From NCBI RefSeq assembly GCF_037042905.1, contig NC_087256.1, positions 4,836,001-4,900,000 on the forward strand: DNA of 64,000 nucleotides. The letters are read 5' to 3'. Shown here one piece after another: positions 14,988 to 63,544 of the stretch. This stretch comes from Lytechinus pictus. Taxonomy: Eukaryota. The position numbers and the translations under genes are program-made. The notes under the pieces were generated by a model. It was not told the DNA's origin and did no database searches. It saw only the letters and a program-made list of their open reading frames with translations. Numbering within the stretch: the first letter of the stretch is position 1; each line of letters opens with the position of its first letter.

Positions 14988-15959
14988 TCAATTAAGTTTC
15001 ATCTTGTCTAGCCAAGCTAACACCTCAGCTCGTTTGCTTCCCTCCAGATAGTCCTCCTCATTATTCTTTGCTCCTGCCTTCCATTTCAGAATGGACTTCT
15101 TGAAGGCATCCTTTGCTTTCAGCACGGTGTTGTTTCGCCATAGATTCACGGTGTCCTCCTGCAGATCTAGTGATGTCTTGCCTCCCGTCAAAGACCTCCG
15201 TCGCATACGAAGCGTAGGCATTCCGTCAGTTGGTAAGGTCACGTTACCGCTATGCAGGTCAGATGACCGAAACGTGGGTTGCTCTTCAATCTTAGGATTC
15301 CTATCGATCATGAACAGTTCTCGAGGAAAGTGGGTAGTGATCTCTGGGATGAATCTCTTCGGAGGTGGAGGAGGTTTCAGTTTGGGTGGTTGGCTTAGAT
15401 ATCGCGGGGACGTTCCACCACGGCGCTCCCTCCAAAGGTCGTGTTCGTGTCTAAACTTCTTGGTGAATAACCCGTAGAGTTCTGGCTGGAATTCGGAATT
15501 GATGGAGAGTTTGGTCTGGCTAGCTGGCAAGTCGAAAGTGATTCCTCTGGAAATAGACTGGCGGGCTATGGCTCGTCGTATTTCAAAGGTTTGTTTATCA
15601 AGGGCTTTACTTGGTATCCAAGAGAAGGCAGATTGTGTTCTGGTCTTAGCGGACCTGCTGTAGTTCGGCACGGAGGCAGCATTCTCTAGCCTAACCCTCT
15701 CGACAGGGTCATCTTCTGGATCATCTGACGAGTAATCCGACTCAGCCGCTCCACCATCTCCATCGTCGTCGTCGTCGTCATTGTCGCATTTATCATCATT
15801 AAGCCATTCCAAACCATTATATGGCATGCTTGACTTACGGCTGATGCTCTCACGAACTCTATCCCAGTCAGCAAGGTCCAAAGACGGGAAGGAATCCCTT
15901 GATTTGAAGTCTGTTGGCCTCCTATGGACCTGCTTGAAGACATCATAAACAGTACACAT
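14988..15959 (-). CDS. Uncharacterised disordered protein 'A' (323 aa from Met49 of the ORF track); RVxF, SILK and C-terminal VxxWLD motif
   Basis: Long GC-richer ORF in AT-rich DNA. Splice acceptor CCCCTCAG|G at 16033 on the minus strand, so the first part of the track ORF is intronic; first in-frame ATG at 15959. Candidate upstream donor GTAAGT at 17581. Confidence 0.82.
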   Translation of the reverse strand: MCTVYDVFKQVHRRPTDFKSRDSFPSLDLADWDRVRESISRKSSMPYNGLEWLNDDKCDNDDDDDDGDGGAAESDYSSDDPEDDPVERVRLENAASVPNYSRSAKTRTQSAFSWIPSKALDKQTFEIRRAIARQSISRGITFDLPASQTKLSINSEFQPELYGLFTKKFRHEHDLWRERRGGTSPRYLSQPPKLKPPPPPKRFIPEITTHFPRELFMIDRNPKIEEQPTFRSSDLHSGNVTLPTDGMPTLRMRRRSLTGGKTSLDLQEDTVNLWRNNTVLKAKDAFKKSILKWKAGAKNNEEDYLEGSKRAEVLAWLDKMKLN

Positions 15960-16141
15960 CGCTGAGGAAGTAAAATAGACCCAGTATTTCAAACAACCGC
16001 ACCCATGTGTTGCATCTACCAGGTTGACATGCCTGAGGGGAGAGATGGAAACGGTAGTCGGAATCAACAAAGATATAATAAAAAACTGACTTTTTAAAAA
16101 CAAATTATTTCTTTCAACGTCGTCATATATGACAAAACAAT

Positions 16142-16376
16142 TACACAGTTGAAAAAATATATATACAACGCTGTTTACTATATGAACCTTACAGTAATTG
16201 ATTAAACAGTTTAAACAAGTGTTTAAATCTTAAGATACAAAGTTTAATTTTCAATATCTAATCTTCAGTAAATTAAACATGATTGTTTAAACGATTAAAC
16301 AAATACTGTACGGTTCATTTAGTAAACAGCGTTGTATAAAATCTTAAACAGCGTTTTTAATATAGTTTACAGTGTA
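16142..16376. mobile_element. Palindromic MITE (TA-CAC...GTG-TA ends); related copy at ~48718-48932
   Basis: AACGCTGTTTACTATATGAACC / GGTTCATTTAGTAAACAGCGTT inverted repeat; the same core sequence recurs near 48752. Confidence 0.65.
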
Positions 16377-19300
16377 TAGATAAACAATGGCGGCAGTGAT
16401 AATGGTGTGTCTGAGTGAGACTTTTTAAATTGAAATACGAGGTATAATAGTTTTATGAGCCAGCAATTTCTTTCCTAATTTATCTTCTTTTATATATATT
16501 CCTTTGTCCCTCTCGTTTCAATTTTCTCAAATTTTATATTTGTTATTACTTCATAATGTCAAAATGAGTTATAATTTTGGGGCAGAACGTGATATACGAA
16601 TGTTAATTTCTTAATGGTCGCAAGAGAGCGAACCAAGCCAGAAAATTTATTTTTAAAATGAAAAATATCGAATTTGTGAAATATTTTGACATAATAGCCG
16701 TTATATCATAATATGTACGCCTTTGCTTTGATAACATGAGCAGGGATATGAGGATAAATGGTTCTAAGACAATAATTTGTTATAATGTCAAATGACCCGA
16801 AGGATTAAAAGTGGAACTGTAAACAGTGCCGCTTTAATGCATGGGATATCCTTCAAATTTAGTTTGTTTGCAAAAGTGGTTATATCCACTTTAGACCATT
16901 CAAATAAAATCTTTTTTTTTAAATTCTCCTATATTGCAATATTCTTATGCGAAACTAAATTGTCATGATGACACTGTATCATGTGAATAAAAAATTAGGT
17001 ATGAACCAAATCTGCCTGTCTTTAAAAAATATATTTCCCCAAAAAATTACTTATGTGGATCTAGCCCCTTTTGCAAACTAACTGAAATGGATCTATCCAA
17101 AAAAAAAAATTCTTTGCCATTTTTGTTCACTTTTTAATGGGAATATCAACTTTTCTTAGGTATAATCTTATTGAGTTACTACAAATCTATAAATTGAGAC
17201 CAACCCAAAAAAATCAAATTTGAAAATGAGCTCTTCAAATACAGATAATAATTAGTTGAGTTTGTATTATATATATATGTTTTCTTAATAGAACACACAC
17301 AAAATCGTCTAGCATGATAAAACAAACAAGAGATTGTATAATCAATTTTTTTCTCAATTTCAGTAATGATGGAAACGAATGGCACCAATCAAAATACTTT
17401 GGCACATCATGAGCATAGAAAATTCGTAATTTTAAGGAGAAAACCACTGATACATATTTAATTAATTCCTCTGATAAATATAAAGTAATTGATTTTGACA
17501 GAGAATATACAGGAAAATATCGGATTGTTAGTATTATCACTATTAAGAAAAAGAAAATTAAAGAAGCCGAAGAAAACTTACTGCTTGTATCACACTGCAA
17601 ATCACTTGTCTTCTAATCTCTTTTATTGTTCGCGCTTGAGACATAAACATGAAAAAACTGCAAAATCTTGACGAAAGCTCAAAAGAACGATAACTTGTCT
17701 ACAATACGAGGGGAATGACGTTGCTTTCTCCTATACTTTCTCATGTTATCTTTTGATCGATTTACTTTTAAGCAGTATCTTGGGACACTTTCTGTGTTTT
17801 TCTAAAGGTAACACCAAACAAAAGATTTATTGATTGAGGTGGGGAAAATGGGAGAGGGCGTTTGTCAAGTTAAGTTTCTTATCCCCATGAGATACCGTAT
17901 GCATGTTCAGTATATATCAATCATAATAATTGTCAAATCGTATTGCATGAACTAGGTCATGCATATGGATAATTGTAAGCACTAATTGCAAATACGCTTC
18001 CCTACCAAGGATAACGTGTACCCAGACAGAAAACATTGCTTTCCTTACTTGAATGTTTTCATGTTTGGTATCATAAGGCGGTTTCAAAAGAGTTGTGGTT
18101 TCACAAAACCTATCAACGCTTTGTCGATCACAACGGTATGGTCGTCTACTTGTTGTTTACATATTTTTGTTTATCAACAAAAATATAGATTGACTTGAGA
18201 AATTTCAATAATCCTTTCTATCTTTATGCGATTAGGTGAATTAATCCTCATTTTCTTTATAAAATGAGATTGTGCGAATGAAATCCTACTAAAGGTTTTG
18301 TCTAATCCTAAAGGTCGATTTCTTAATGATAAACATGATATAGGTATACTAATCATGTTGACGATAAGGTAAGTCCCTATATTTTGTGGAACCACGCCTC
18401 TTATTTCACTATCGATTTATTGTTATCGATCGTCCTTGGTTCAATCAAAGAAGGAGTGTATATAGGTCGGACCAAGCTGTACAGACACAAATCGATATCT
18501 GTTAACATAACTATCGATCATCTTCCTCGCATTGGTGCCCTGCTCATTATTATATAGCTGCCACTATTATCAGCAGAAATATATCTATCCTTGCTGGGGG
18601 TAATTATTATCTTGTAGACAAATCGTTCTATGGTCTGTGACCTATTTTGACAATAGTCGTGTTTTTAAATAATCTAAAACGAAAAGAATTGACTGACACT
18701 GCTCGAGATAAATTGAGCTGATAAAATGTTTTATCCATAAGGTTGCTAAAAAAGGTGTAAAGGAAGACCCTGGTTATCTGGGCTTATGTCAAATTCGACC
18801 TTACTTAGTCATTATATCTTAAATGTTTCAGTCTCATATTGAGCCTTCCTATTTTGGGAAAAATGAAATATATAAAAAAATGAATAGTTAAGTAATTTCA
18901 TTACTGTAGTTTATATTGAACACATGCGTTCTCGAGTTGATCTACGTATATCAACGAACTCTACTTGAAGTGTTACTGAAAACACCGAACATGCCGAAAT
19001 GATTTCCAATATACATGTAATAAGGAATTGAAATATGAAGATGAATTTCAGGGCAAAATTCACAAATATAATTTTCTCGTTTAGAGGTAAATACCACCAT
19101 GAATGTAGGCCTTCATATAAAGTATTTTTAGCATTTTATTGCTTTTTTATTTGAACATTGGGACATTGCATTACAATTTAAACTTTAATTTTGTTTCTCA
19201 TGTGTTTATCAACGATTTTATATCTGTATTTTCTCTGTTACCATGGATACAGAGTAAGCAGATCTAATAAGGTGAAAACTGGCAGATAAGTGATGGAGGT

Positions 19301-20129
19301 TTAAGGATTGATATATATCCCATACCCTTAGTTAAATGTTCAATCAGCTATTTTTGCTTTGACACTTCACAGCGGACCCAGGAGGGGGGGGGGGGGTCCG
19401 TGCACCCACCCCTGGAGGAAAAACATGGGAGAATTTAGGAAAATAGACAATGGAAAGCGATGTAAAATCAAGAGGAGAGGTGTGATTGGAGTGCTGATTC
19501 CGCTTTTCTGGCTTGTTACGGAATTTTGGAAGAAAAGTGGGCCCGCCCTTTGTCAATCTTGGATATGCCACTGAGTATTTATGAATGTGATTGTGGTCAT
19601 GAAATTTTTAATATTTTCAATGGTTTTAAAGTCCAATGTCTGAAAAAGAATACCAATGTAATTGTATATAGACATAGACAGGCACGGAGTGGGAAGATAG
19701 AACAAAAAGAGAAATAGAGAGAGAGAGATGGGGAGAGGGTGAGATAGAGAGGAGAGTGGGAGGGAGAGAGAGGCGGGTAGAAAAAAAAATCGTTGTTTAT
19801 TCGAGTTTAAAGTATAATATATATGACTAATGACTCAACGTTTAAGAGCTCACATTCGTGAAGATCATACTCTATTTAATCATTTATTTTAATTTTAGTG
19901 GACAATAAAAGCCGATTATATACAGTTCAAAAGTTCATGAGTCAGAATTTTGGCCAAGATTTCCTTTGATATTGATCACAACATAATTTATGACAACATA
20001 AGATGTGGGTTGACTTTACCATTTTTACGATATGCATAAAAAACACTTTAAATCATTAAAATTCTGACTGTCATACATGTAATTACACTGAATGAATTGA
20101 TGTAAATGTAATGATTCCATGAAAATTCT

Positions 20130-20290
20130 CGATTTCACTCTATAATGTATTCTGTTTTTACTTAATTGCTATGATGTCGAGTTAATTGTTAACTGCAGGG
20201 CGCCTATGGAAAGCAGTTTTGCATAACTGAACAGGCCTACCCTGCAGTATAAAAAAAGATAACCAATAAATAAATAAATAAATGAAAATA
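20130..20290 (+). mobile_element. LINE 3' end with (TAAA)n tail
   Basis: Stem-loop-like CAGGGCGCC...GGCCTACCCTG followed by AATAAATAAATAAAT, typical of CR1/L2 3' ends. Confidence 0.45.
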
Positions 20291-22259
20291 TAATGAAATA
20301 GATTATTTCAATACCTTAACTATATGATAAAATGTAACCACGAATGGATTTCATGAACATACTATACATCGGGGGTCTCCCGGCTCGCCCTGCGTGCCAC
20401 CTTGAAACCCCAAATGTCACCCGCCTCAATATCTACCACTATATTACATATATCCTTTTCATAAGCAAGCCTTTTATCGCCATCCCCCCCCCCCCACACA
20501 CACACACACACGTCCAACACAAATATCCATGAGTACAGAAACAGCCATTTAACTGTAAAAAAAAACAATGAAACTGACCAGGGAATCAAATGAAAACACG
20601 ACAATGTAAACACACAAGGAAAAAATAAATAAAGATAACCTGGATCAATATAATCATTGTTCTTAACAATAAAGAGTACATTGTGACAGATTTACCCCCC
20701 CTCCCTCCCCCCTCACATGCAGATACCGAGACGCTTCATATACGCCCTCTTGCGAGAAAAACAACAACGTCAATACACAAGTAACAACAAATTAAAAAGA
20801 TGTCGTAAAGTTTATTCTCATAAATAATAAATGTTCTATTAACATGATTAATGAGATGGATACATTTACAAAATGAATATCGTCAAACAAATCTGTTTCA
20901 AGTCACCACATGCAAGCAATAAATATAAAGATATTCCACTCAAACAAGAGGTACAATCGGACGAATACACCAATATGAGGAGGGATTTGGCATTTTCTGA
21001 AATTGGAATTGTTTAGGGGACAGTGATTCTTTATTTTTGTCATTTTCACAGAGACACATATATGTAATTTAAGTGGTTGGTTCTGAATTTGAAAATCAAC
21101 CTAGTTTTATGTGGTGAAAATTACTACCAACTTTTACAGACCCCAAATCCCCAATGTGTGAGCATATCACTGGCGTACAGGTGGGGCTTTGGGCCAGGGA
21201 ACCACCCCCTAAAAAATCAGGACCAAGAAAAAGAACGAAAATTAAAGAAAAGGGTTCAATATGCTCTCGCTTTCTAAATATCATGTCAAAAACTTTTGTG
21301 CCCCAAAACTCAACATTTTGCTCGCTCGCATATTTTTAGAACCATATCTTTTCCCTAAAAATATTTGATTCATTACGCCACTGAGGAATATATAAACTAT
21401 GGTCTACAGAAATGTTGAAATGACATTTGAAATATAATGCAGAGGCCTACAAATGGGTCATTTTTTTCATTACCATAAATCTTAATGATGTTACAATCCT
21501 CAAAATAGTAGGTATCAGATACGCGAACAAGGATAGTTATTCATTATTGATCAGGAATAATGCATTATCTAGAAAGGATTATCTACCATGTTTCACAAAC
21601 AATAGGAGTGACATGAAAAAGCAATTGAAGGCAGTCAATCTATGTTAGTATTAATTTTCTTGGAGCGGTCCACGTCGTGCTCCTTTAATAGAATATCGAT
21701 TTAAATAATTTGTTAAATTTGATGTGAAGAAGAAAAAAACCCATTTGTTTAAACATTCAAGAAACTGAGTAGATTAGTCGACCCCATTAAGTTAACAATC
21801 TTTTATGAATAATTGTTTAAACATGTGACGACATTAAAGCAAATACAAAGAATTAAAAAAGTAAGGAAAGAAAAATTAGATTATACAAAAAAAATCACCA
21901 AAAAAGAACCTAAACTCTCTTTGCGTGCTTTACGACTGATTGGTGTTTTTTTTCGTTAGTGTCCGGTAAGTAATAATGATTATGAATTTAAAAAATGGAA
22001 ATTCATACAAAAAGGTGTTGTGGAAACAAAGAAAATTTGACCTTGCGAAAATAATTAGAATAAAATAGTAATTATTCAACCAAATGTGAAGATGAAAATG
22101 AATAAAACAAGTTGAAAATTTATCTCCTCATTTTCTGGTAGATGATACGTGAATTCATAAATGTATTTATACGACTGACAGTGGCCGTTTCGCTATTTCA
22201 GATTAGTAATAATTTTTACATAAAGTTCCGACGAATTCCGAGAGAATATTTGTAATATT

Positions 22260-23240
22260 TCAGAGTGGTATGATGGTGATTTTATTACCTTCATCATCAC
22301 TTTGGTCATCAAGTGTCATTTTGACCACTGAGTTGTTAACTCCATCCAACCATTTTGAAATTCTCTCATTCAGTTCGGAGTCACTTTCATCTTGATCTTC
22401 GTACACGTAGTCACCAACGACGTCGCTCTCGGGGTCGATTTTCTCCTTGGCGATGTTGTTATTATTCATGACGTTCGTAATGGAGATCGTAGGATGGTCG
22501 TAGGTAGCTCGTAATTTGTTCTGTTTGGGAGGCGGTACCTCGGGGAGGAAACTATTGTTCGAGTTGTCACCGAGGTCATCCATTGAATTTGAACTGATGC
22601 TGAAACTAGCTCTGTACTTACGACCATGGTGTGTAATTGTCTGAGGATTCCCTGTTGCATCACCAGCGATTGGTCGTAATTGGCCTCTCCCCCTTTCAGC
22701 GTCATCTCCTAATGGACTTTGGTCATTGCTCGCTCGGCTATCAACCCGGCGACAAAAATCATTGACCTTCGCAGCAACCCGGTTGAATTCCCGTTCCGAA
22801 TGCTGCATCATTCTCCGTTTCACCATCGAGGAACTGGAATACCGCCTTGCTCTGACGTTCGGTAATCTCCCGTTGGCGATCAGGGCTTCGCCGCGTTGTT
22901 GAGTCAGGACATTGGCCAGGGTAAGACCCGTTGGTACGGAGAACGACCTCGTCAGAGGAGGTGGCTGACCACCGAACCGTTTCATCGGCAAGCCTGATTT
23001 GTCGACAGGCGGCGACGGAGTTGGCCGCAATGGGGCTGACAAAACCCGCATTTTGCTATAAGTTTGAAATGATGATGATGTCGACGACGATGACCGCCGG
23101 GTGCGCTGTTGAAGGAGAAGACGGTCTGGGATTTTCTTCTCTTCCTTCTCTTGTTTCCCACGTTCGTCATCGTTTGGGAGACAGAATGACACTGATTTCC
23201 GTAATGTTCTCTGCCCAGGTTGTATCTTGTCATCATTCAT
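22260..23240 (-). CDS. Uncharacterised disordered protein 'B' (326 aa); RVxF (RKSVSF), PxIxIT (PTISIT) and C-terminal IxxWLD motif
   Basis: 326-codon ATG ORF in a single coding exon. Acceptor TTTCACTCACAG at 23477 and donor CAG|GTAGG at 23772 define a likely 5'-UTR intron. Confidence 0.85.
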   Translation of the reverse strand: MNDDKIQPGQRTLRKSVSFCLPNDDERGKQEKEEKKIPDRLLLQQRTRRSSSSTSSSFQTYSKMRVLSAPLRPTPSPPVDKSGLPMKRFGGQPPPLTRSFSVPTGLTLANVLTQQRGEALIANGRLPNVRARRYSSSSMVKRRMMQHSEREFNRVAAKVNDFCRRVDSRASNDQSPLGDDAERGRGQLRPIAGDATGNPQTITHHGRKYRASFSISSNSMDDLGDNSNNSFLPEVPPPKQNKLRATYDHPTISITNVMNNNNIAKEKIDPESDVVGDYVYEDQDESDSELNERISKWLDGVNNSVVKMTLDDQSDDEGNKITIIPL

Positions 23241-28760: not shown

Positions 28761-28774
28761 ATCAATTACCAATC

Positions 28775-37600: not shown

Positions 37601-37624
37601 TGATACAGGTATCTTGCACTCTGT

Positions 37625-39209: not shown

Positions 39210-39212
<3 letters not shown>

Positions 39213-39280: not shown

Positions 39281-39284
<4 letters not shown>

Positions 39285-43948: not shown

Positions 43949-44136
43949 NNNNNNNNNNNNNNNNNNNNNNNNNNNNNNNNNNNNNNNNNNNNNNNNNNNN
44001 NNNNNNNNNNNNNNNNNNNNNNNNNNNNNNNNNNNNNNNNNNNNNNNNNNNNNNNNNNNNNNNNNNNNNNNNNNNNNNNNNNNNNNNNNNNNNNNNNNNN
44101 NNNNNNNNNNNNNNNNNNNNNNNNNNNNNNNNNNNN
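43949..44136. other. Assembly gap (188 N)
   Basis: Run of N. Confidence 0.99.
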
Positions 44137-50369: not shown

Positions 50370-51227
50370 TCAGAGTGCTTCTTCTTGGATAGCCGTCAAG
50401 GTTTTAGAATCAATCGAATCTTCAATCTGAGCTGTCTCTACATTCTCCAACCAAGATAAAATCCGATTCTTTGTGCACTCATCGACGAAGGCATCGCTTG
50501 GAAACGTTGTCCTCGCAAACTTCACTTTGATGTCTCTATCTTGTCTCGACAGCTTGGTCATACTCACTGTTTCTCGAAGGTCCTTCTGCATCGCTTTCGC
50601 TCTTAAGGTACGCGGTGAATCAAAGGACGAGGAAACTATGGCGGACATGGTACTTGATGACTTGGTCTTGTCACCCGTCTTGCCGTCGTATTGAACGGTA
50701 TAGACAACGTGTCGGGAAACGGGTCGCTGATCGATGCTGGGAAGCCTCTGGTGAAGGAGATCTACATCGGGTTCGTTGACGAGGTTATCGAGTCGACATC
50801 GTTGGTTTAATGTGTCCTCCTTGGTAAGCTGGTTGTCGACATCGGAAAGATCATCAGCGTCTTCACGAGGCACAGGAGTTTCACATCTCCCTCGCCTCCC
50901 TAAGAGTCTCGGTTGAGGCACTGAACTCGGTTTCACTGAACACGTGATCGAAGCCGTCGACGCGTCCGACGACATGGCCACCCCGCTGCTCCGTAAGCTG
51001 ACATCACGGGAAGAATTCGAGTCACTCGTCTGTTCGTTCCGACCGGATCGGATTAGCCGAAGTTGGCTTCGTTTGATCCGATACTGAGATCGGGTTGTGT
51101 TCGGTGGTGATCGGGTGGAAGAGATCGGCATGGTGGGGGATGTTAGCTGTCCAAAACTACCTCTGGAAGGAGACGGATCCCCGCAAAGAGATCTGAAACG
51201 ACAAACATATTCTTCCATTAAAGTCAT
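50370..51227 (-). CDS. Uncharacterised disordered protein 'C' (285 aa); RVxF (KVKF), C-terminal IxxWLE motif and LxxIxE (LTAIQEE)
   Basis: 285-codon GC-richer ATG ORF in a single coding exon. Candidate 5'-UTR intron from donor CAG|GTAAG (~54058) to acceptor TATTTCCAG (~51771). Confidence 0.83.
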   Translation of the reverse strand: MTLMEEYVCRFRSLCGDPSPSRGSFGQLTSPTMPISSTRSPPNTTRSQYRIKRSQLRLIRSGRNEQTSDSNSSRDVSLRSSGVAMSSDASTASITCSVKPSSVPQPRLLGRRGRCETPVPREDADDLSDVDNQLTKEDTLNQRCRLDNLVNEPDVDLLHQRLPSIDQRPVSRHVVYTVQYDGKTGDKTKSSSTMSAIVSSSFDSPRTLRAKAMQKDLRETVSMTKLSRQDRDIKVKFARTTFPSDAFVDECTKNRILSWLENVETAQIEDSIDSKTLTAIQEEAL

Positions 51228-52713: not shown

Positions 52714-52948
52714 AATAATAATAATGATAATATAGGTAATATATTTACCCAGGGAAGACACTTCAGTTCCGAAAACTGTTCTCCCAGCGGGCCCTGCTAT
52801 CATTATTTCCCTAGCTTATCTTAGCTGCCTAGGCGCTCAAGCATTCAAGGAATTTTTTCCTACCAGGTACCCATTCACCTCACCTGGGGTGAGTGCAGCA
52901 CAATGTGGATACATTTCTTGCTGAAGGAAATTACGCCTTGGCTGGGAG
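52714..52948 (-). mobile_element. 5'-truncated SINE-like element with (ATT)n tail
   Basis: Minus strand reads ..CCCAGGTGAGGTGAATGGGTACCTGGTAGG.. (conserved-core-SINE-like) and ends in TATTATTATT; the tRNA head is mostly missing. Confidence 0.55.
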
Positions 52949-55773
52949 GAGACACGTAATGGTAGACAATCTGCTATGAAGTTGATTAACTGAGGTTCTT
53001 TTCAGACATTAATGCGAATTAGAATCTGTATGACCCTTGATTTCAGCAGGGATACAAGCTAAAATGCAAGCAACTGATTGCTACATGTATAATTCTATCA
53101 ATCTTTGTGAAATGAATTTTGAACTGAAATGATAAATTTGCTTGTGTTTTAGGCTATTCAAGATCGTTTCGTATCTATATGACAATCTGAATACCATCAT
53201 CACATGTGTTTCCATCCTGGTGCCATAAGATAAAATAACGACACGTGACACAGCCAAGCCTTGATTTTGAAATTACCCCATGTTCTTTCCTCAGACCTGT
53301 CAATAAAACATTATATTTATATTCCTATTTCTTACTGTTTTAGAAGAAGAAGACGACGAAGAAGAAAAAGAAGAAGACGACGTAGAAGAAAAAGAAGAAG
53401 AAGAAAAGGTCTGTTTTATTTTTATTTATTATCAATTTAATACGACATATCTTTTTTTATTTCTTGTTAGGGTTATCAGTCTGCATTCTATATATAATGC
53501 ACAAACAATATTCCCATATTTTGTATATCATGATATCACTATAAAAGAATAAGGGTCTATGTAATAGTTTCAAGACGGGGCATGAAAATATGGTTTCTCA
53601 TGTTTATTTAGATGAAAATAAAATGCAAAGCTACGAATGTAAGATTTTATTTTGAAAAGCAACCTTTCGAATACGACCCCTATACCGTGAGCTTACCACA
53701 TGAACAATGAACTCATAATGTACTTGAAGCAAGACGCACTCGAACTTTGTACTAATAATTTGTTCTTTATCACAAGCAAATAATAATTATATCTCTTTAA
53801 ATAGAAACGTCAAGTCATTATGTAGTCACCACAGTGAGATCTTACTTTTATTAATGTTTTAGTCTTCTCGTACACGATCCAAAATGAATATCCAATTTAA
53901 AGCAATGGCGGGACTTAATCTCACCAAAATATTTTATCGCATAGGATGAGAGAATGAAAATTTATTACAGATACACTGCCAAATTATAAATAATAATTTG
54001 TGAAACTAATAACAATGATGACCATGTTACACGTTGGATTCATAATTTCAATTCTTACCTGATTTAAGTGCTTCTTATCACTTATCTAGGCTTCATCTTA
54101 CAGTTGTTGAATTCTTGCTAATTAATCCTTAGACAACAGAGGCCAATATGTGATAAATATTACCACCAACATTCCGGGAATACACTTGCAGATTAATATC
54201 AATATCCAACGATATTCAGCAGATTTTCCTTGAAATCGATTTAGTTCTGATGAATAAATCCTCAGAGGTGACCTTTGAAATTGAAATGAATTTAAAAAAA
54301 AAAAGGACAGCCAACTTTTTTCTGTGATTTCTTCAGGAAGAATACTAGTATTGATCAAAATATTTACCAATTAACGAAACAAATAACATATTAATGAGGC
54401 CGTCAGCTTCAAGTTCGAGAAAACGTTAAACCACGTCCGCCAAGGTTGAAGAAGATCCTTTGCCATACCGGTAATCCCGGCTAATGACACCGGTGAGTCT
54501 GCTCTACGTGTCGAATACCCGAGTTCAGTTCCACGGTCTAGCAAACAAATCAAACACTCGATGACGATTCTTTGAATACGATTTTACCCCCAGGAAGCTG
54601 AAAATCATCAAAATAAAGTATTATTCATTTGTGATATAGAATTCACCAGCCGGGATCTGCGGTCGTGGTTCGCGAGAGGCTTAATAACAAATCATATTCA
54701 AGATTGGTGCCTCGATCGGCATTTTTCGACAAGAACACAAACAATAGAGAAGAAGACAGTTGTCATGGGGTTTGTTTGTAAAAGAGATGTGACCTTTGAG
54801 CATTTTAATTCTGATGTATATATTGACATGCTTAGTAATATATAGGTAAACCCAAAAGACGTATTTCAACTTTGTTGTGCCGTTTTAGTGGTAGACTATC
54901 TCTTACTGATAATGACGATAGTAATTCAGTTTGCATTCTTTGAAATTATCGCTGTATTTCATGGTAATAATCATTTTAATTTCTGGCCATAATTATTATG
55001 TTAAAATTAAGGGTAAATTATCGGTTAGTCTAATTCTCAGTTTATCCAACTTCAAAATGGTCTAAACTCATTTGTCTACAACCAGTTCGTCTATTTCCCA
55101 CTTGGTCCTATATCCTATTCGTCTAATTACCAGTTGGGCTAAAAAAAATGAAGTTCACGTTGATTATTCTGTTATTTTGAGGCATTATACTATAAGGGTC
55201 GATTTAACGAAAATTCACTCAGTTTGAAAAGTATATAAGAACATAGAAGCGATATCAATTCTAATGCATTTTCATCTCTCATATTTTAGCACTAATCCTA
55301 GGGCGGCGATGGGGGCTATACGTAATTATGATATAGTTATACCGTCCATGTATCACAAAGAGGTATACTAAAATGATTAAATCATATAACTTAATCTATG
55401 TTTGATTTGTGTTTATTTTTCTACACCACTTTCAAGTTTTTGTTTTTAAGGGGTGGGGAGAGTGAGGAAGGGAGGGGGCTAGGGAGTGAGAAGGGAGGGG
55501 TTTTTAATTCATATACACAAAATTTAATGTCAAAACAAAACATGTTATAATTGAACATCTGCAGAATCATAAAAGCGAATAAAAATCAATGTATGTATGT
55601 ATTTACATATATATATAAATATGAACAGACGTGTTTTTCACGACTGTTTCAGAAACGGATTTTGAATTCTCTTTTTTGTCACATCAAGGGCACTGACGAA
55701 GAGTGTGACTTTACCTTTCATTTTTTGAGAGCTATGCTCCTTTTAAAATCTACGATTTTATTTCTACGGCATT

Positions 55774-56092
55774 NNNNNNNNNNNNNNNNNNNNNNNNNNN
55801 NNNNNNNNNNNNNNNNNNNNNNNNNNNNNNNNNNNNNNNNNNNNNNNNNNNNNNNNNNNNNNNNNNNNNNNNNNNNNNNNNNNNNNNNNNNNNNNNNNNN
55901 NNNNNNNNNNNNNNNNNNNNNNNNNNNNNNNNNNNNNNNNNNNNNNNNNNNNNNNNNNNNNNNNNNNNNNNNNNNNNNNNNNNNNNNNNNNNNNNNNNNN
56001 NNNNNNNNNNNNNNNNNNNNNNNNNNNNNNNNNNNNNNNNNNNNNNNNNNNNNNNNNNNNNNNNNNNNNNNNNNNNNNNNNNNNNNNNNNNN
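55774..56092. other. Assembly gap (319 N)
   Basis: Run of N. Confidence 0.99.
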
Positions 56093-56674
56093 GTACTGTA
56101 TTGGATGTATTTTTCACCAAGAACCTAGACCTACTTTATTTCTCTTATAAATAATTTCTAGTCTAACCATAACAGAAGTGAGTGCAGACAAAGTCACGCC
56201 ATGTCTATTCATATACCAATATCACTTCACCCGGCCCCAATTAGTGATACGATCACTCAGGCATGCCCTTTTCTGCATCGCAGTCACACCAAATGGAAAT
56301 GTTCTAGACAGATCAACATAATCAACGTCATTCCGAATCACTATTACTATATCAATCGATCGGTTAAGAGTTTTTTTTGTGAGGTGTGACTTGCTTCTTC
56401 CAGTGATAGATTATCACTCGGGTAGGAATAAGAATAAATCACAGTTCAAAAACAAAAAATACAAACAATAAATTTAAACGGCCTATTTTGACCATTGTTA
56501 TTTAGTTTTTAAACTGGGTAATGTACATATAAAATTTTACCAGTCGACTTTCTTCGATTACAGTGATTCTTTGTCGGATCACGTCAGACGTTCTAAAGCT
56601 TAGCTTAATGAGATCAATTGTGTATATTGTAAACATTGATAAACGTGAATAGTTAATGACAATATTGTCATTAA

Positions 56675-57258
56675 AGGAGAATGAAACCCTTGAAACCAGC
56701 TGAATCCATATCAAAGAGAAAATTCAAATATACATATTGTTGAAAGTTTGAGGAAGATTGAGTGAATAATAAGAAAGTTATGAGCATTTGAATATTGAGA
56801 TCACTAATGCCATGTAGATCCTCCCATTGGCAATGCAACCAAGATATGTGATGTCACACACGTACAACTCCCTCATTACCTTAGTACTTATTTCACTTAT
56901 ATTCTCACTTTTATAGAGTCTATCACAAGGTGAGGTGTTCTTTTTATGAGAGGACAAGTATAGAGGTTTCACAACATTATATCATTGACGAATCGTTTGT
57001 CATATGATTAGAATGAGCAAAAAGAGATGTTTTGGGGTATATTTTCAGTGTCCAAAAGGGGAGGGTTGTTCATCTGTGACACCATAGATCTTGGTCGCAT
57101 TGCCAATAGGAGGATCTCCATAGCATTAGTGATCTCGACATTCAAATGCTCATAACTCTTCTATTGCTAGTCCTATTTTACTCAAACTTTTGTTGATCTT
57201 ATTCTTTGATTTTTCTGCTTTCACAAAAGCTAACTTGCTCCAAGAGTTTCATTCTCCT
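56675..57258. mobile_element. TTAA-target MITE (Kolobok/T2-type)
   Basis: TTAA|AGGAGAATGAAAC ... GTTTCATTCTCCT|TTAA, with long imperfect subterminal inverted repeats (AGTTATGAGCATTTGAAT..GAGATCACTAATGC / GCATTAGTGATCTC..ATTCAAATGCTCATAACT). Confidence 0.85.
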
Positions 57259-58128
57259 TTAACTATTCACTACTGCACATCTATACCCAAGGATTGGAGT
57301 TAATTTCCCGAATGACTGTAATGTTTGTTATTCTTTATTTTTCTCAAAAAGAATGATAAACATTAACAGTATATTGGGCCCGAGGCAGTCGAGGTCGGGC
57401 CCAGACCGACACCGATGACACCCGGTGTAAGGCTCTTGGAGATCGAGCGAGATTAATTTCTATTTCAATCGTAAAACCTGGAATTGTGGTGCCGTTTTAA
57501 CACTATAAAATGCTAAACTACTAAACCTCTGCATAATTTTGTAAGTTTCCAAATATTAAGAGTCAATCTTATTATCACGATGGATATTATTGGTTTTGGA
57601 GAATGTACATGGAGTATGGAGTTACTCCATGCTTTGACATCGTGAAACTATTGCCAAACCTAGTTTTGAGTATGCGAGAGACAACAACGGCCGAAAGAAA
57701 TAAATTTGAAAAGAGAAAATTGCGTTATAAATCATAATTTTATAGTTTGAGTGGGAAGCTTTTGACCATAGTTTTGACAGCATTTCACACTACAATCCCC
57801 AATCCCCATGATTGTGGCCCCCAAAGCTATTATGTAGAGTAATAATTTGCTCCGCTTTATGGATCTGTTCTATTCACTGAACTCGAGGGTCAACTTTAAT
57901 AACAGAGTATGAATTGAAATCCCAGTAAACTAACCCCCTGCTTAGAATTGTGTCAAAAGTCAAGCAAGGTTCACTTGAATTATAACTTCAAAAGAAATGG
58001 ATAAAAGATAAATCAGAGAGAGAGAAAAAAGAAAGAGGAAGGGAGAGAGAGTGAGTGGCAGGGGCGAGGAAAAGGTGAGCCTAGTGTGATTGTTATCAAC
58101 ACCGATGAATATATTTGCTTGGCGTGCA

Positions 58129-58138
58129 GTGACGTCAC
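58129..58138. promoter_or_regulatory. Full palindromic CRE (GTGACGTCAC) with a nearby inverted CCAAT box
   Basis: TGACGTCA at 58130-58137, ATTGG at ~58178. Motif match only. Confidence 0.35.
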
Positions 58139-59276
58139 AATATGATATTATTCTCAGGTTCAAGGCCACGGCCTCTATTGGTCAAAGTCACGTTTTTATT
58201 AGTACACGCGAGTTTGAAATAATTTGAGGCTTCGATGAGACCATAACTATGCCTGTTCGTTTGAGAAGCCAGGTCCACAAAGAATATTTTGATCCCTGTT
58301 AATGTGAGGCTCGAGTGGGCCAGGAGGGGGGGGGGGGGGGGGGGGCTTTATCAACGTCTTCTCACGTTTTGTGTTTCATCTTAACACCAACAATTTGTTT
58401 CAAAATTCTGTTGTTTATTTTTAATTGAGATATTGAATCATAGGAAATGTCAAAAGTTACTTGAAATGCCATGATTCGATTTGGGATGTATGTATTATCT
58501 GCCTCGGGTTATTTTCGAAGCGATCCGGGAAAGCAATACAGGGGCTTGTGATTAAATTCGTTTATGAACACAATTCTCATTGGCAAATCGGTATATAAAA
58601 ACTTTTCGAAGTAGTATGATTAAATTTCATTGTGAAATATTATTTTTTTCATCTGATGAATTGGGGCTTTTTTTATTTGCATTTCATACATCAAATATGC
58701 ACAATGAAGTTTAGAGTCGAAAATGTTAAAAGGTGAACTTGCAATTACATTGCACAGGCGCGGATTTTATATGAATACTTTGACAAGCAAGCAAAAAAAA
58801 ATCTTTATAAAATGATGGGCATATTTTCTTCGAAAAAAAAGCGCCAAGTATAAAGTAAATTCAATTGTATTAAAAAAAAAATCATCACTCATTTTTGCAA
58901 TAAATACATTTTACATGCCGCTTCATTAATTTTCAAATTTTACGGGATGTGCCTGCACATTTCACCCCACCCGTAGATTTTTCCTAAAAAAATAAACTTT
59001 CACTGACTTACATTAAGTCAACAAAACGCAAATACAAAACGCAAATACAAAAAATAAAATAAAACGAAATGTAAATTATTTCAACTAAAAATAAAACAAC
59101 AGAGAAAATAAACACATCCAACTAAAAAAAAGGCTTCCCCCCAAAAAAAATTGAATACATTGAAATAAATGAAATAAAGAAATTTAAAAAAAATTAACAT
59201 AATAAGAAAATCAAAATGAAAAAAAAAGAAAGTAAAGTTAAAAAAAAAACAAAAATATGAAAGAAAACAAAAATGC

Positions 59277-59281
59277 AAAAA
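59277..59281 (-). terminator. RNA polymerase III oligo-T terminator of the SRP RNA gene
   Basis: T5 directly after the RNA, followed by ~240 nt of further T-runs on the minus strand. Confidence 0.8.
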
Positions 59282-59578
59282 GGATTGGGTTTCACTGTGT
59301 TGAACGGGCTGTAAGCCGCCGACTATTCACAGGCGCTATCCCACTACTGCTCCACACGGGGACTTTTGCCTGCTGCGTTTCCGCCCTGGGCCAGTACGTC
59401 CCTCCTTAGACGACCTGGTTGCCCGATCCTCCGACCAAGTAACCATATCGATGCCGAGCTTAGCGCGGACGCCCGATCGCCATAGACCGACGACATACAG
59501 GACTCCCGCTCTCAAACGATCCACCAACCCCGACTTCCAAAGCAGCTGGATTACAGGCGCACGCCACAACGCCCAGTC
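59278..59578 (-). ncRNA. 7SL: Signal recognition particle RNA (7SL / metazoan SRP RNA)
   Basis: Minus strand starts GACTGGGCGTTGTGGCGTGCGCCTGTAATCCAGCT (Alu domain). It contains the helix-6 GGAG loop and helix-8 GGCCCAGGGCGGAAACGCAGCAGG (GAAA tetraloop, SRP54 site), then GGGATAGCGCCTGTGAATAG, and ends CCCAATCCTTTTT; ~300 nt. Confidence 0.97.
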
Positions 59579-62300
59579 GAATTTCCATTGGTAAAATAAG
59601 GATATTATCTTGGAGACTATTCATATAGCGGCGTAGAGGGCAACGTTCCACTGCTAGCTCAGGCTGATGCACTCAGATTCCAAATAATAGCAAAACATAT
59701 GTGAATGATCGCATTGCTTTTTTATATCGAATTCTCATACTTTTATTAGTACAAGCATTAGCACATACATATTGCAAACCATTATTGACCACCGATAATA
59801 TTACTGTTCAATCAAGTAACGCGAATAAAAATATAAGGCACTTTTTATCTCCACAAAATTGACTTGTGTACACATGCAAGTTTACCCAGTTCCTGTGTTT
59901 GACAATTCTTTTTAAAATTCTTTATTTATATTTTTGTGTTCAGTCAACAATTTCAAAGCTCTTAAGGACTGAAACCGTCGACACGGCGGAAAAAATAAAG
60001 AAAGGGGATAGCGAAATGATAAGTAAATAATATCGACAAAAGTGGTTACCTATACTATACTCCGGGTTTATTTTTTTGTTCATTTTACACTCAGCTTTAT
60101 TATTTAAATAAACGATAGTTTCAAATCGCCTTTATCAATTTTTGATTGAAATTTCATTTTAAACAGAGCACTGTCAAATTTTGACAAGAATCCCTCAACA
60201 CGGTTTCCAAATATGACGGTTCCTGGTCAATTTGTTATGGAGACTTAATATAATAAACTCATGCAAATTCATCTTAATTCATATTTCCAGGGTTTCATAC
60301 ACATAATTCTCCCCATGCTTCCTCCATTTTCCCCCACTTTGGAGCCTCCTTCCCCGTCGGAATTGAAATTATAATCTATTGTGACTTTTGAAAAATACAT
60401 TTTCCTTTCACGTTTTCTACAATGACTTATTTCACTGTAAAAACGTTGTTTAAACATTTCAAGCACACTGTTTAAGCCCGTCAATCCAACCATGCCAACA
60501 GCCATTGTTAAAAGTTTAAACATGAATAAGAACATTCACACTTTCTTAATTGTGGTGCAGTACTGGAATTTGCATTTCGAATCTCGATTATCATATATAA
60601 TTTTTTTACTTTGTAACAAAATGATATACGCAATGATACCTACATTCAAAATTTGAAAAAAAAATATGAAAATGCGGTAATATTATGTTTTTTTAAATCA
60701 AAATGACGAATTTCTGATGCGTGATCGATTCACTATAGAATCATAATAGATTGTGATATGGGACATATCAACATTGATAATTTCTTTCTCTCTATCACAG
60801 TAATTATGTTGGCTTTATGAAGTTTTGGGATTTTAATCCTTAAATAAGGACGTTCGAGTGAAATCAAAAGGGGTGAACAAGAAAAATCTTGTTATGCATG
60901 GCACCATTCTGCGTACAGATCAGTGGCCACGGAAATAAAAGGTTAGTACAGCTCCCTCTATCGTTCATTCCAGTACAGGGCCATTCGTTTTCAAAGGGGC
61001 CCGATCGAAGAGACATTGAACAATGGGAAATAGCTTTAATCTAAGAGTAATGGGTAGATGGAGATCGATACGAGATATTATCCAACATAATACCATCTTA
61101 TTCAGTGTGGGAGGCAGCTACACGAACACAATCAATGGATTATAACAACAGGAGTATACCAACGGGGGGTCGTGAAGCGTGATCTTGTAGTAATTTCAAC
61201 GCATTAAATTCGGCAAACAACATTCAACATGATACATGGACTTGTGATAAGAAAATAATAAATACTGAAGCACGGGCAGAAATCGAAGATTAACAACGAG
61301 TTGGAATTTATTGATATTGGAAGTTGTGATGACATCTTATGATTTCTTTTCGTTGACGGATAGCCTCATCTTATTTCGAGCTAGTTGAAAGAAATTCACC
61401 GGACCTGCCGTTGTGCTCACCATGGATACATGTTACAAGTCTGATAAAAGGTAAATATATATATTCATTTTTTTCAAACATTTTTTAGCTAGTGTAATCG
61501 CTTTCTTATTTACTTGAATCAATATTTCATACTTATGCAACCAATATTTTATGCAACCAATATAATATCAATCACCAATACATAGATAGTAAGATAATCC
61601 TAAATCACTTCCCCGCCTATAGTCCCATCGTAGGTTTAGAATCTAAAATTTAAAAGTTTTAGTTTCCAATACATAGAAAAGTATAACAGAAATATTCATT
61701 GCAGCCCTACTAGTCATGCCAGATGAAAACTTAATTTTTATGTAAAGTCATCATGAATTTAAGTGTTTAAAAGTTGGCTTTCGTAACTTGGTTAGTTATA
61801 TTAATTTTGTTGCGTGATGAACCAATGTTGTTTATATTTTGATCGTCAACATTCACATAAGATCCTGCAAAGCAGTTAATAAGTGTTTTCATTAAAAAAA
61901 ACATAGGAAATGTAAGTCAGATGACGTGATGGTCTTTAATCATTGAACTGTAGATGGACGCACAGTGCATAAAATAGACATGATTTACATGCCAACACAA
62001 TTATTTCACTCGAAATAAATGTTTATTTTAATATGATTAAACAATTTACCAATATATCATATTCTACCATGGAGTTACATGACTTGTATGACTGCCGGAG
62101 CCACCGATCTACCGTCGAGGGGGGCCGATGCGGCATCATACCGAATCAACACAAACAATTGAAATCAACTGGCCTGTTTCTGACTCAACTCATCTGTGTA
62201 ATTCATTGAATCGTGAAGCTTTGCAATAATTGGATATGACTGTCAGTTACATGATCAACTTCTTTTTTATTTTGATCGTACAGGTGAAGCTCATGACGCA

Positions 62301-62390
62301 ATGCTGATACGTGAATATATTGATGATGTTAGATCCCTTGAGGATGAGAACGGTTCGATGTCTAGTATCCCAAAATGCAACTTCAGATGA
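62301..62390 (+). other. Overlapping upstream ORF (29 aa, MLIREYIDDVRSLEDENGSMSSIPKCNFR*)
   Basis: Starts 17 nt into the exon that begins at 62284 and overlaps gene D by 16 nt; gene D is in its -1 frame. Confidence 0.5.
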
Positions 62391-63544
62391 TGCCTGCCGA
62401 TACGGGCTTATCAAGTTCTGAATCGGACAGCAGTAGTAGCAGCATCAAGATGACGTTAGGGTCGCCATCATCACCAAGTAAACTCAGGGGTACCTTCACG
62501 CTCTCGTCGGCCACTGTAGATCCTCTCACCAACTTCGACTCGTGGCCTACGACCACAGGGTTCACCTCGAAAGCGATCACGGAGCCGCGACCAGGAGTTG
62601 GACGCGGTCGTCTCCCGTCGATTGGCGAGTTGAATCCGGCCTCGAAACTAGTTTTCCCTGCTCAACAGAGTTTCATGCAGATGTTCACAACCCCGGGAAC
62701 TGATGGAAGTATTTACTCGAAAAGGAAGAACCTTTATGCGGGTTACCATCAACAGGCTCAAGGTAGACCGGTCAAAGACCGCATCATCAAGCATAACCAA
62801 CCGGAAGTGCAGAATAAGTCTCGTGTAGAACCGTTACCCGAAGAAACTGATGTAACCAACGCACCAAAATCTTTCCTGCAGGGAAGTGGATTGTTAGAAC
62901 CTAGTAAAAATGTATGGACGGCGCCATCGGACATGACCAAAGGTCCTAAACATGTTGCATTGTTTCCAACGAGATCACCGCCATCAAAGTTGACCGCTCA
63001 ACGAGAAACGGTGACCATTGACGGTAAGATCCGTCGAGTCCGGTTTCTTAGCGCTGACCACACCCCTCTCAGGGAAGATCCAGAGTTCAAGAAGCTTTTG
63101 GGAAACACAAAGACAGTGAGCGAGATCAACCGGAAAACTGCACCAGACACTAAGGCAAAACCTACAGAAGACAAGAAAGTCAATCTGAGATCTGTGACCG
63201 TATCAAGGACAAGAAAAGCGAGTCTTGATGGGGGCGAGGGAGGTAAGATACTTCGGCCTACCCCAAAGCTTGACTCGAAGCAGGAATCGCCAGATGTGTG
63301 GTTAGAAAGAGCCAGAAAACTTCGTGCTTCGAAAGACAAAAATGCCAAAAAGACAGAGGGTACCTGCAAGCAATCCGAATCCATGAAGTTCCATGAGGAA
63401 GAGAATAATATGGACATAGATGATGATAAGACGTTGTGTAATGAAATTAAACATGTTAACTATTGTGATGAGAAGAAAACAAGATGGGTTGTAAGGTGGC
63501 TGGAGGAGGTTAATAGACAAAGTCATTTTGATATTATTGAGTAA
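62375..63544 (+). CDS. Uncharacterised disordered protein 'D' (389 aa); LxxIxE (LPSIGE), RVxF (RRVRF) and C-terminal VxxWLE motif
   Basis: 389-codon ORF in a single coding exon; likely 5'-UTR intron from AAG|GTAAAT (61451) to TTTTGATCGTACAG (62283). Confidence 0.87.
   Translation: MQLQMMPADTGLSSSESDSSSSSIKMTLGSPSSPSKLRGTFTLSSATVDPLTNFDSWPTTTGFTSKAITEPRPGVGRGRLPSIGELNPASKLVFPAQQSFMQMFTTPGTDGSIYSKRKNLYAGYHQQAQGRPVKDRIIKHNQPEVQNKSRVEPLPEETDVTNAPKSFLQGSGLLEPSKNVWTAPSDMTKGPKHVALFPTRSPPSKLTAQRETVTIDGKIRRVRFLSADHTPLREDPEFKKLLGNTKTVSEINRKTAPDTKAKPTEDKKVNLRSVTVSRTRKASLDGGEGGKILRPTPKLDSKQESPDVWLERARKLRASKDKNAKKTEGTCKQSESMKFHEEENNMDIDDDKTLCNEIKHVNYCDEKKTRWVVRWLEEVNRQSHFDIIE

What the first reader, a model, noticed from the sequence alone, without database searches (positions are those of the whole stretch)
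14988..63544. Hidden gene cluster: four otherwise unalignable disordered proteins share a C-terminal [DE]x6[IV]xxWL[DE]x[VM] motif
Seen: the four ORFs are similar in size (285-389 aa), Ser/Arg/Pro-rich and without recognisable domains, yet their ends align without gaps. A YLEGSKRAEVLAWLDKM (~15000-15050), B ESDSELNERISKWLDGV (~22338-22388), C FVDECTKNRILSWLENV (~50440-50490), D YCDEKKTRWVVRWLEEV (63461-63511). All four have an acid at -7, I/V at 0, WL at +3/+4, D/E at +5 and V/M at +7; three have an aromatic at -9. The motif always lies within ~25 residues of the stop. No other protein-coding gene is visible between them. Inference: an old tandem family of motif-only adaptors whose single conserved element is an amphipathic helix binding a common partner. 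Pairwise BLAST would probably miss the relationship. I do not recognise a named family; a superficially similar WLxxV C-terminal helix in vertebrate PRR18 is only a recollection to test.
Basis: partly seen in the sequence, partly recalled or inferred. Interest (0 to 1): 0.88.

Follow-up and report, generated by a model that had tools for sequence, protein, structure and literature searches.

The report
Sea-urchin disordered proteins sharing one helix
Four neighbouring sea-urchin genes, plus a fifth elsewhere in the genome, encode mostly disordered proteins of an unnamed family that is at least as old as echinoderms. One branch reaches amphioxus, and the only significant similarity between the proteins is a conserved helix near the C-terminus whose binding partner is unknown.

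Summary
The four ORFs exist at the stated places, neither assembly gap touches them, and each carries [DE]x6[IV]xxWL[DE]x[VM] 3 to 25 residues before its stop. A profile of the motif run over the whole 812-Mb genome in six frames gave five hits at E below 0.05: these four, plus a similar ORF on another contig.

The genes are real:
- A is spliced, shown by an RNA-derived contig with a GT-AG intron.
- dN/dS is 0.11 for D, 0.21 for C and 0.28 for A.
- B, C and D have orthologs in other sea urchins.
- D has orthologs in sea stars, sea cucumbers and amphioxus.
- The head-to-head C-D pair also occurs in a sea star.

In B, C and D the motif lies in the best-conserved stretch of the protein. AlphaFold2 models it as a helix in otherwise disordered B and D. 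With the motif removed, profile comparison finds nothing significant between the families.

No Pfam family, solved structure or named protein matches. The partner is unknown. My best guess is a docking helix for a shared conserved partner. B and D also carry a conserved, strict RVxF-type PP1 docking motif; A and C do not. The PRR18 link could not be tested, and the urchin-profile search found no vertebrate relative. This is a sound, moderately interesting new family, not a solved mechanism.

The parts
14988..15959 (-). Gene A coding sequence: 323 aa plus stop, ATG at 15959-15957. The protein matches an annotated NCBI/UniRef protein exactly.
   Evidence: dN/dS is 0.28 against the L. variegatus ortholog XP_041477488. 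Against the X1 contigs there are 6 synonymous and 4 nonsynonymous differences plus an in-frame 3-nt insertion.
16033..17581 (-). Intron of gene A, 1549 nt, GTAAGT...CCTCAG on the minus strand. It separates a non-coding 5' exon (seen from 17582 to 17747) from the coding exon (16032 down to at least 14000).
   Evidence: A 2199-nt contig of run X15 joins 17581-17747 to 14000-16031. Splice sites were read.
15000..15050 (-). Motif of A: YLEGSKRAEVLAWLDKM, ending 3 residues before the stop.
   Evidence: Identical in L. variegatus except one residue upstream.
22260..23240 (-). Gene B coding sequence, 326 aa plus stop.
   Evidence: Orthologs are L. pictus LOC129272859 (97%), S. purpuratus XP_003727112 (76%) and an ENA urchin (P0030). 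AlphaFold2 gives mean pLDDT 47.6, so mostly disordered.
22338..22388 (-). Motif of B: ESDSELNERISKWLDGV, modelled as a helix (residues 287-301).
   Evidence: It lies in the most conserved 15-residue window of B and is kept in P0030 as SELNERISKWLDDV.
23184..23198 (-). KSVSF (B residues 15-19), a strict RVxF-type match. The block RKSVSFCLP is invariant in all B orthologs.
   Evidence: A strict match arises by chance in 2.2% of shuffles.
50370..51227 (-). Gene C coding sequence. The ORF is 285 aa; RefSeq models in Lytechinus start at the ATG at 51131 and give 253 aa.
   Evidence: dN/dS is 0.21 against L029.
50439..50489 (-). Motif of C: FVDECTKNRILSWLENV.
   Evidence: It lies in the most conserved window of C, with the Acanthaster C-like gene included.
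62375..63544 (+). Gene D coding sequence, 389 aa plus stop.
   Evidence: dN/dS is 0.11 against L028. Orthologs occur in Diadema, Acanthaster, Asterias, Holothuria and Branchiostoma.
63461..63511 (+). Motif of D: YCDEKKTRWVVRWLEEV, inside the modelled helix 366-381 (block pLDDT about 80).
   Evidence: W375 and L376 are invariant in 12 sequences from four groups.
63032..63046 (+). RRVRF (D residues 220-224), a strict RVxF-type match inside the invariant urchin block RRVRFLSADH. AlphaFold2 models a short hairpin at 212-221.
   Evidence: It is kept as KRIRF or RRIRF in Holothuria and P0017 and as KRVHF in amphioxus. It is TRIRF in P0012, which matches neither regex, and it is lost in sea stars.
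63290..63337 (+). Second modelled helix of D (residues 306-321, PDVWLERARKLRASKD). It is invariant among urchins and specific to the D family.

Best explanation
A to D are diverged tandem paralogs, together with an unlinked fifth gene E at G000:C1, locus L020. They belong to an unnamed family of mostly disordered, Ser/Arg/Pro-rich proteins. At least the echinoderm genes examined (A here, C-like and D in Acanthaster) have a non-coding 5' exon and a single coding exon.

The one element all members share is an acidic-aromatic stretch followed by a roughly 15-residue amphipathic helix: [YF]x[DE]...[IV]xxWL[DE]x[VIM]. Its I/V, W, L and V/M side chains fall at positions i, i+3, i+4 and i+7, on one face of the helix.

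The likeliest mechanism, which is inferred and not shown, is that this helix is a docking motif. It would insert its Trp-Leu face into a groove of one highly conserved partner, while the rest of each paralog carries its own motifs: basophilic phosphorylation sites such as RLPSI, RSFSVP and RRRSL, and in B and D a conserved RVxF-type PP1 docking motif. On this reading B and D are candidate PP1-interacting proteins, and the family as a whole acts as adaptors or regulators tethered through the common helix.

Shown: the genes, their selection, their age, the motif's conservation and the helix prediction. Inferred: paralogy rather than convergence, docking to a common partner, and PP1 binding.
For: - Motif specificity in the genome.
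- Transcription and splicing of A.
- Purifying selection: dN/dS 0.11 (D), 0.21 (C) and 0.28 (A).
- Orthologs, with the motif in the top conserved window of B, C and D.
- D family in sea stars, sea cucumbers and amphioxus, with W and L invariant.
- Sea cucumber D-type motifs (KNSRILKWLQEV) bridge D to C (KNRILSWLENV) and B (NERISKWLDGV).
- C-like gene head-to-head with D in Acanthaster.
- A and B adjacent in L. variegatus.
- AlphaFold2 models the motif as a helix in disordered D and B.
- Strict RVxF regex matches only in B and D, conserved in their orthologs, with 2 to 4% chance per protein.
Against: - No partner is identified.
- The RVxF-type motif is absent from A, C and E and is lost in the sea-star D orthologs, so PP1 cannot explain the family-wide helix by itself.
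- The RVxF regexes were recalled from memory of the literature, not taken from a tool.
- D's RRVRF sits in a block that aligns weakly (P 0.15) with a non-RVxF block of B, QTITHHGRKYRASF. It may therefore serve another role.
- Homology between the families rests on the motif plus gene context. The profile P-values are only 0.0014 to 0.12.
- A has only a very close ortholog available, and E has no expression or ortholog evidence.
Confidence: 0.55

Rival explanations
1. The helix is a self-association module. Family members would form homo- or hetero-oligomers through the shared C-terminal helix, and that would keep it alike among paralogs.
For: The same helix sits at the same position in five co-resident paralogs. 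D has a second WLE-containing helix at 306-321 that could pack against it.
Against: One 15-residue helix is short for a stable dimer. W and L are invariant from urchin to amphioxus, where only one family member was found within 10 kb. That fits an external conserved partner better. The single complex prediction gave no verdict and does not count either way.
Confidence: 0.12
2. The helix is a secondary PP1-docking element, a MyPhoNE-like helix working together with RVxF. The whole family would then be PP1 regulatory subunits.
For: Amphioxus, sea-star and P0017 D proteins read K-T-x-Q-[IV]-V-x-W-L. This resembles the MyPhoNE consensus RxxQ[VIL][KR]x[YW], which I recall from memory. MyPhoNE-containing regulators are a recognised PP1-beta-selective class (PMC13545437). 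B and D have conserved strict RVxF matches.
Against: - The Q is absent from urchin and sea-cucumber D and from all of A, B and C.
- The helix is C-terminal and 80 to 280 residues from the RVxF, whereas by my recollection MyPhoNE lies just N-terminal of RVxF.
- A, C and E have no RVxF.
- The motif profile found no MYPT chain in the PDB at E up to 10.
Confidence: 0.12
3. The motif is an acidic activation-domain-like element (acidic and aromatic run plus a phi-x-x-phi-phi helix). It would contact a transcriptional or chromatin cofactor, making these nuclear co-regulators.
For: Acidic-aromatic runs precede the helix: DYVYEDQDESDSE, SDDFVDE, EEDYLE. The core [IV]xxWL is a phi-x-x-phi-phi pattern, which is my own knowledge of activation-domain motifs. 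The proteins are basic and serine-rich and have no fold.
Against: There is no DNA-binding or other domain. Activation domains usually tolerate sequence drift, whereas here W, L, the acid at +5 and V at +7 are nearly fixed.
Confidence: 0.1
4. The shared motif is convergent or chance, and the four genes are unrelated neighbours.
For: Outside the motif no pair of families aligns significantly.
Against: Five hits in an 812-Mb six-frame scan, four of them within 49 kb. The position near the C-terminus, the size and the composition are the same, and the echinoderm genes examined share an exon structure. The C-D pair is conserved in a sea star. Shuffles give about 1e-4 per protein.
Confidence: 0.03

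Closest known systems
RVxF-type PP1-interacting proteins (disordered PP1 regulatory subunits)
   Same: They are disordered proteins with no fold that carry short conserved docking motifs. B (KSVSF) and D (RRVRF) match the strict RVxF pattern, and the match is kept in their orthologs.
   Different: A, C and E lack the motif and sea-star D has lost it. The family-defining WL helix is not among the PP1 motifs named in the paper read (RVxF, SILK, phi-phi, KiR, MyPhoNE). No binding was tested.
MyPhoNE helix of MYPT1, PPP1R16 and SH2D4 (PMC13545437)
   Same: Both are short amphipathic helices with a hydrophobic residue three positions before a Trp. Some D orthologs read KTxQ[IV]VxW.
   Different: The consensus is not met in most members. 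The position relative to RVxF is reversed and distant. The profile search found no similarity to MYPT chains.
Helix 1 of SAM domains (for example liprin-beta-1, PDB 3tad)
   Same: Each of the three liprin SAM domains begins with the same V/I-x-x-W-L-x-x-V/I pattern, and these were among the few weak PDB matches (E 1.8).
   Different: Only 3 to 25 residues follow the motif here (about 40 in E), too few for a five-helix SAM domain. There is no Pfam SAM hit, and the match is not significant.
Vertebrate PRR18
   Same: It is said to be a proline-rich protein of similar size with a WLxxV C-terminal helix. I could not verify this.
   Different: No PRR18 sequence could be obtained from any tool. The exhaustive profile search with urchin D returned no vertebrate protein at E up to 0.001. 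Papers mentioning PRR18 say nothing about a motif.

Membership tests
RVxF-type PP1-interacting proteins | An RVxF docking motif ([HKR][ACHKMNQRSTV]V[CHKNQRST][FW], recalled from the literature) in a disordered region | tested here: inconclusive
   Met in B (KSVSF) and D (RRVRF). Not met in A or C, and E has no match by eye.
RVxF-type PP1-interacting proteins | The motif is conserved in orthologs | tested here: met
   This applies to B and D only. B is invariant in three urchin lineages. In D the motif is kept in urchins, loosely in Holothuria and P0017, and in amphioxus; it is lost in two sea stars.
RVxF-type PP1-interacting proteins | Physical binding to the PP1 catalytic subunit | not testable with these tools
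The genome search for Metallophos found no PP1 in a single open frame; the intronless ORFs I inspected were other metallophosphatases.
MyPhoNE-containing PP1 regulators | RxxQ[VIL][KR]x[YW] lying N-terminal to RVxF (consensus recalled from memory) | tested here: not met
   Only some D orthologs have the Q, none has the basic residue at position 6, and the helix is C-terminal. There was no MYPT hit in the PDB profile search.
SAM domain | A five-helix domain of about 65 to 70 residues recognised by Pfam | tested here: not met
   There is no Pfam hit at E up to 1. The stop codon follows the helix by 3 to 25 residues in A to D.
UNC119_bdg / MACIR (PF15435; ESM Atlas lead) | A match to the Pfam model | tested here: not met
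   The Atlas cosine score of 0.78 is below its useful range. PF15435 does not appear among the Pfam hits of 12 D-family members.
PRR18 | Detectable sequence similarity to vertebrate PRR18 | not testable with these tools
   No PRR18 sequence was available. Indirectly, the exhaustive search produced no vertebrate hit.

The most novel reading that the evidence does not exclude
The acidic-aromatic stretch plus [IV]xxWL[DE]x[VIM] helix is a previously undescribed docking motif of deuterostomes. It would tether a family of rapidly diverging disordered proteins, some of which also recruit PP1, to one conserved hub protein. Finding that hub would define a new motif-domain pair and give a function to a set of 'uncharacterized' genes from amphioxus to sea urchins.
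Probability: 0.35. Interest if true: 0.6.

Novelty: new variant of a known kind. Interest (0 to 1): 0.42.

Why it matters
All members found are labelled 'uncharacterized' and match no Pfam family. Even so, the D branch has kept an almost fixed Trp-Leu helix since before echinoderms and cephalochordates split, and the gene cluster has been maintained in echinoderms.

This is a clean, testable case of paralogs whose only durable constraint is one short helix. The motif is short enough for peptide pull-down, and a W-to-A control is obvious. The candidate PP1 link in B and D gives a concrete first hypothesis.

It does not bear on a long-standing open question, and disordered motif-carrying adaptors are a familiar kind of protein.

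Tried and rejected
- Pfam scans of A to E, the sea-star C-like protein and 12 D-family members found nothing.
- The ESM Atlas gave only sub-threshold leads for D and the amphioxus protein (0.75 to 0.78: MACIR/UNC119_bdg, TEX33). The named-cluster search with the D C-terminus gave nothing.
- PDB profile searches found only a designed repeat protein, a glycoside hydrolase and liprin SAM helices, none meaningful for homology. The full D-family profile found nothing.
- The complex prediction of D 296-389 with C 196-285 returned 'no answer' (score 0.01). It is no evidence either way.
- I looked for a PP1c sequence to co-fold. The genome's Metallophos matches gave no PP1 in a single open frame, and the intronless ORFs inspected were other metallophosphatases. 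I did not splice exons by hand.
- I looked for a second family-wide block (the hairpin TVTIDGK / TITHHGR / VQYDGK, RLPSI, VWLERAR). With the C-terminus cut off, hhalign gives P 0.08 to 0.4, which is not significant.
- RNA raw reads of two 2026 runs, about 6% sampled, showed no reads on gene A's exons, so expression there is low or absent. The splice evidence comes from a contig of another study.
- L028 aligns colinearly to the window upstream of D, so it does not show splicing.
- A third motif-like ORF in the Acanthaster locus (YLLENAQRCRKWLADL) is not significant (E 0.21).
- No 7SL gene lies in the D loci of four other species.
- PRR18 papers were uninformative.
- Earlier scan notes held nothing for this place.
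Full report
**Source and layout.** The window is sea-urchin DNA. B and C are 97 to 99% identical to Lytechinus pictus LOC129272859 and LOC129272860. A has a close ortholog of at least 90% identity in L. variegatus, XP_041477488. The window is G000:C12:4836001-4900000 of an 812-Mb assembly. Two N runs lie at 43949-44136 and 55774-56092. Both are intergenic and touch no ORF or motif, so only linkage and distance across them are uncertain. Independent support for linkage comes from gap-free contigs in other species. A and B lie about 9 kb apart on one strand in L. variegatus (L030). A C-like gene and D lie head-to-head about 6.5 kb apart in Acanthaster (L024), where the only N run between them is 5 bases long.

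**The observation.** All four ORFs exist as described. Each carries [DE]x6[IV]xxWL[DE]x[VM] once, ending 3 (A), 25 (B), 22 (C) and 10 (D) residues before the stop. In the six-frame translation of the window the core WL[DE]x[VM] occurs five times, and four of these are the ORF ends. In 200,000 shuffles per protein the core fell in the last 45 residues with P of 8e-5 to 7e-4, and the full motif never did. In B and C the motif holds the protein's only tryptophan. A 37-column profile built from 16 family C-termini (A6) was run over the whole genome in six frames. It returned the four genes (E 9e-17 to 1e-5) and one further ORF on contig C1 (E 0.017), then noise at E of 2 or more. The tool scores only its best first-look candidates, 13 here. 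That fifth ORF, E (L020 565-1674, 369 aa), is again Ser/Arg/Pro-rich and reads DADTRQWILHWLEGV about 40 residues from its stop. So the motif is not common, and its clustering is not chance.

**Are they genes?**
- Gene A. A 2199-nt contig of run X15 joins 17581-17747 to 14000-16031, skipping 1549 nt. On the minus strand the skipped piece begins GTAAGT and ends CCTCAG. So A is transcribed and spliced, with a non-coding 5' exon.
- Start of A. The long ORF in the spliced form starts at the ATG at 15959 and gives 323 aa, not 371. That exact protein is an annotated NCBI/UniRef entry. Another individual's contigs (X1) cover only the coding exon. They differ by 6 synonymous and 4 nonsynonymous changes and an in-frame CAT insertion. 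A 20-nt insertion falls just upstream of the ATG, as expected for a UTR.
- Selection. dN/dS is 0.28 for A against L. variegatus (dS 0.06). It is 0.11 for D and 0.21 for C against a more distant urchin (dS 0.92 and 0.79).
- Expression caveats. Two sampled RNA raw-read runs showed no reads on A's exons. The D ORF is held by contig sets of about 100 Mb from six studies and two species, far smaller than the genome, which suggests transcriptomes but does not prove it.

**Orthologs and age.** B, C and D each have orthologs in Strongylocentrotus and in more distant urchins. D has one in Diadema at 38% identity. A profile of the four urchin D proteins, searched exhaustively against 1.84 billion representatives, also found proteins from these groups:
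- Acanthaster and Asterias (sea stars);
- Holothuria (sea cucumber);
- three Branchiostoma species (amphioxus);
- two clusters of unknown origin.

All are labelled 'uncharacterized', and no vertebrate protein appeared. Across 12 D-family sequences the nearly fixed C-terminus is N-[YF]-C-x-x-x-K-[TN]-x-x-[IV]-x-x-W-L-x-x-[VI]-N. The sea-cucumber version (NFCDIRKNSRILKWLQEVNEQ) sits between urchin D, C (DFVDECTKNRILSWLENVETA) and B (SELNERISKWLDGVNN). That argues for one ancestral motif. In Acanthaster the gene upstream of D, on the opposite strand, is a Ser/Arg/Pro-rich protein of about 299 aa ending ...TRERIVSWLSEIAYAKEEDQGILQDALSCIDEE. Its tail resembles urchin C. The C-D pair therefore predates the echinoid-asteroid split. 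No further member lies within 10 kb of D in Diadema, Holothuria or amphioxus. 7SL RNA is absent from those loci.

**How alike are the families?** Profile-profile comparison aligns only the C-terminal motif: D against C P 0.0014, D against B P 0.004, B against C P 0.12. After I cut the motif off, no pair reached significance (P 0.08 to 0.4). The best B-D match was a block that AlphaFold2 models as a short hairpin in both (QTITHHGRKYRASF against ETVTIDGKIRRVRF). The best C-D match was the RLPSI block. 'Motif-only' does not, because each ortholog group keeps several other blocks. Even so, the motif lies in the top-ranked 15-residue window in B, C and D.

**Structure.** AlphaFold2 with the family alignments gives mean pLDDT of 45.7 for D and 47.6 for B, so both are largely disordered.
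- In D the ordered pieces are a hairpin at 212-221, a helix at 306-321 and a helix at 366-381, which is the motif (block pLDDT about 80).
- In B they are helices at 108-117 and 136-171, a hairpin at 201-210 and a helix at 287-301, which is the motif.

The conserved I/V, W, L and V/M residues fall at i, i+3, i+4 and i+7, on one face of the helix.

**What it does.** This part is inference. A short helix kept almost unchanged among paralogs that have otherwise diverged beyond alignment, and across phyla, fits a docking motif for a conserved external partner best. I found one concrete second motif. B has KSVSF inside the invariant RKSVSFCLP, and D has RRVRF inside RRVRFLSADH. Both match the strict RVxF pattern for PP1 docking, which I recalled from the literature. 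The chance of such a match is 2 to 4% per shuffled protein. The motif persists in B orthologs and in D orthologs from urchins, one sea cucumber, P0017 and amphioxus. It is lost in sea stars and absent from A, C and E. PP1 binding is therefore a reasonable hypothesis for B and D, not for the whole family.

A resemblance of some D helices (KTxQ[IV]VxW) to the MyPhoNE helper motif (a class discussed in PMC13545437) fails on consensus, on position and in the PDB search. I could not co-fold with PP1c because no usable PP1c sequence was available. A co-fold of the D and C tails gave no verdict.

**Comparison with known families.** There is no Pfam, PDB or Atlas match. The weak PDB hits to helix 1 of the liprin SAM domains show only that V-x-x-W-L-x-x-V is a common helix pattern. 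PRR18 could not be tested.

**Verdict.** It is a new, unnamed deuterostome family of a familiar kind: disordered proteins that carry short motifs. The partner is unknown, and I rate the interest as moderate.

Noticed in passing
window 10077-11915 (+): A 612-aa ORF with a NACHT domain (E 5e-16), apparently an NLR-like gene. A NACHT gene is also the neighbour of gene A in L. variegatus (L030 15572-18538).
   Followed up: partly
window 59279-59577 (-): A full-length metazoan SRP (7SL) RNA gene at 272 bits, between C and D. No 7SL lies in the D loci of Diadema, Acanthaster, Holothuria or amphioxus, so it is not part of the conserved arrangement.
   Followed up: yes
G000:C1:26659087-26660196 (L020 565-1674, +): A fifth family member, E: 369 aa, Ser/Arg/Pro-rich, with motif DADTRQWILHWLEGV about 40 residues from the stop. 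It is unlinked to the cluster. Its exact sequence is not in the protein collection, and neither expression nor orthologs were checked.
   Followed up: partly
window about 16061-16454 and 16849-17242: Repeats inside the intron of gene A show very high summed contig depth (hundreds to thousands) and many loose read ends. They are probably dispersed repeats or transposon fragments.
   Followed up: no
window 55551-56150: The listed 199-aa ORF is an artefact of the N run at 55774-56092 being read as X.
   Followed up: yes
L027 9929-10843 (Holothuria leucospilota): The deposited model KAJ8026307 (P0014) leaves the reading frame after KWLADV. The genomic ORF continues NAQTYFEIVEQPS and then stops, like every other D ortholog, so the model's 3' end looks mis-spliced.
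   Followed up: partly
L024 21572-22075 (-) (Acanthaster planci): The last ORF piece of a 451-aa gene downstream of D contains YLLENAQRCRKWLADL, 46 residues before its stop. It may be a third family member in the sea-star cluster, but the match is not significant (E 0.21).
   Followed up: partly
window 22260-23240 and 62375-63544: B and D both have a short modelled beta-hairpin in a conserved block (QTITHHGRKYRASF and ETVTIDGKIRRVRF). C (VVYTVQYDGK) and E (AIKVYYDGK) have look-alike strings. This may be a remnant of a second shared element, but it is statistically unsupported (P 0.15).
   Followed up: partly
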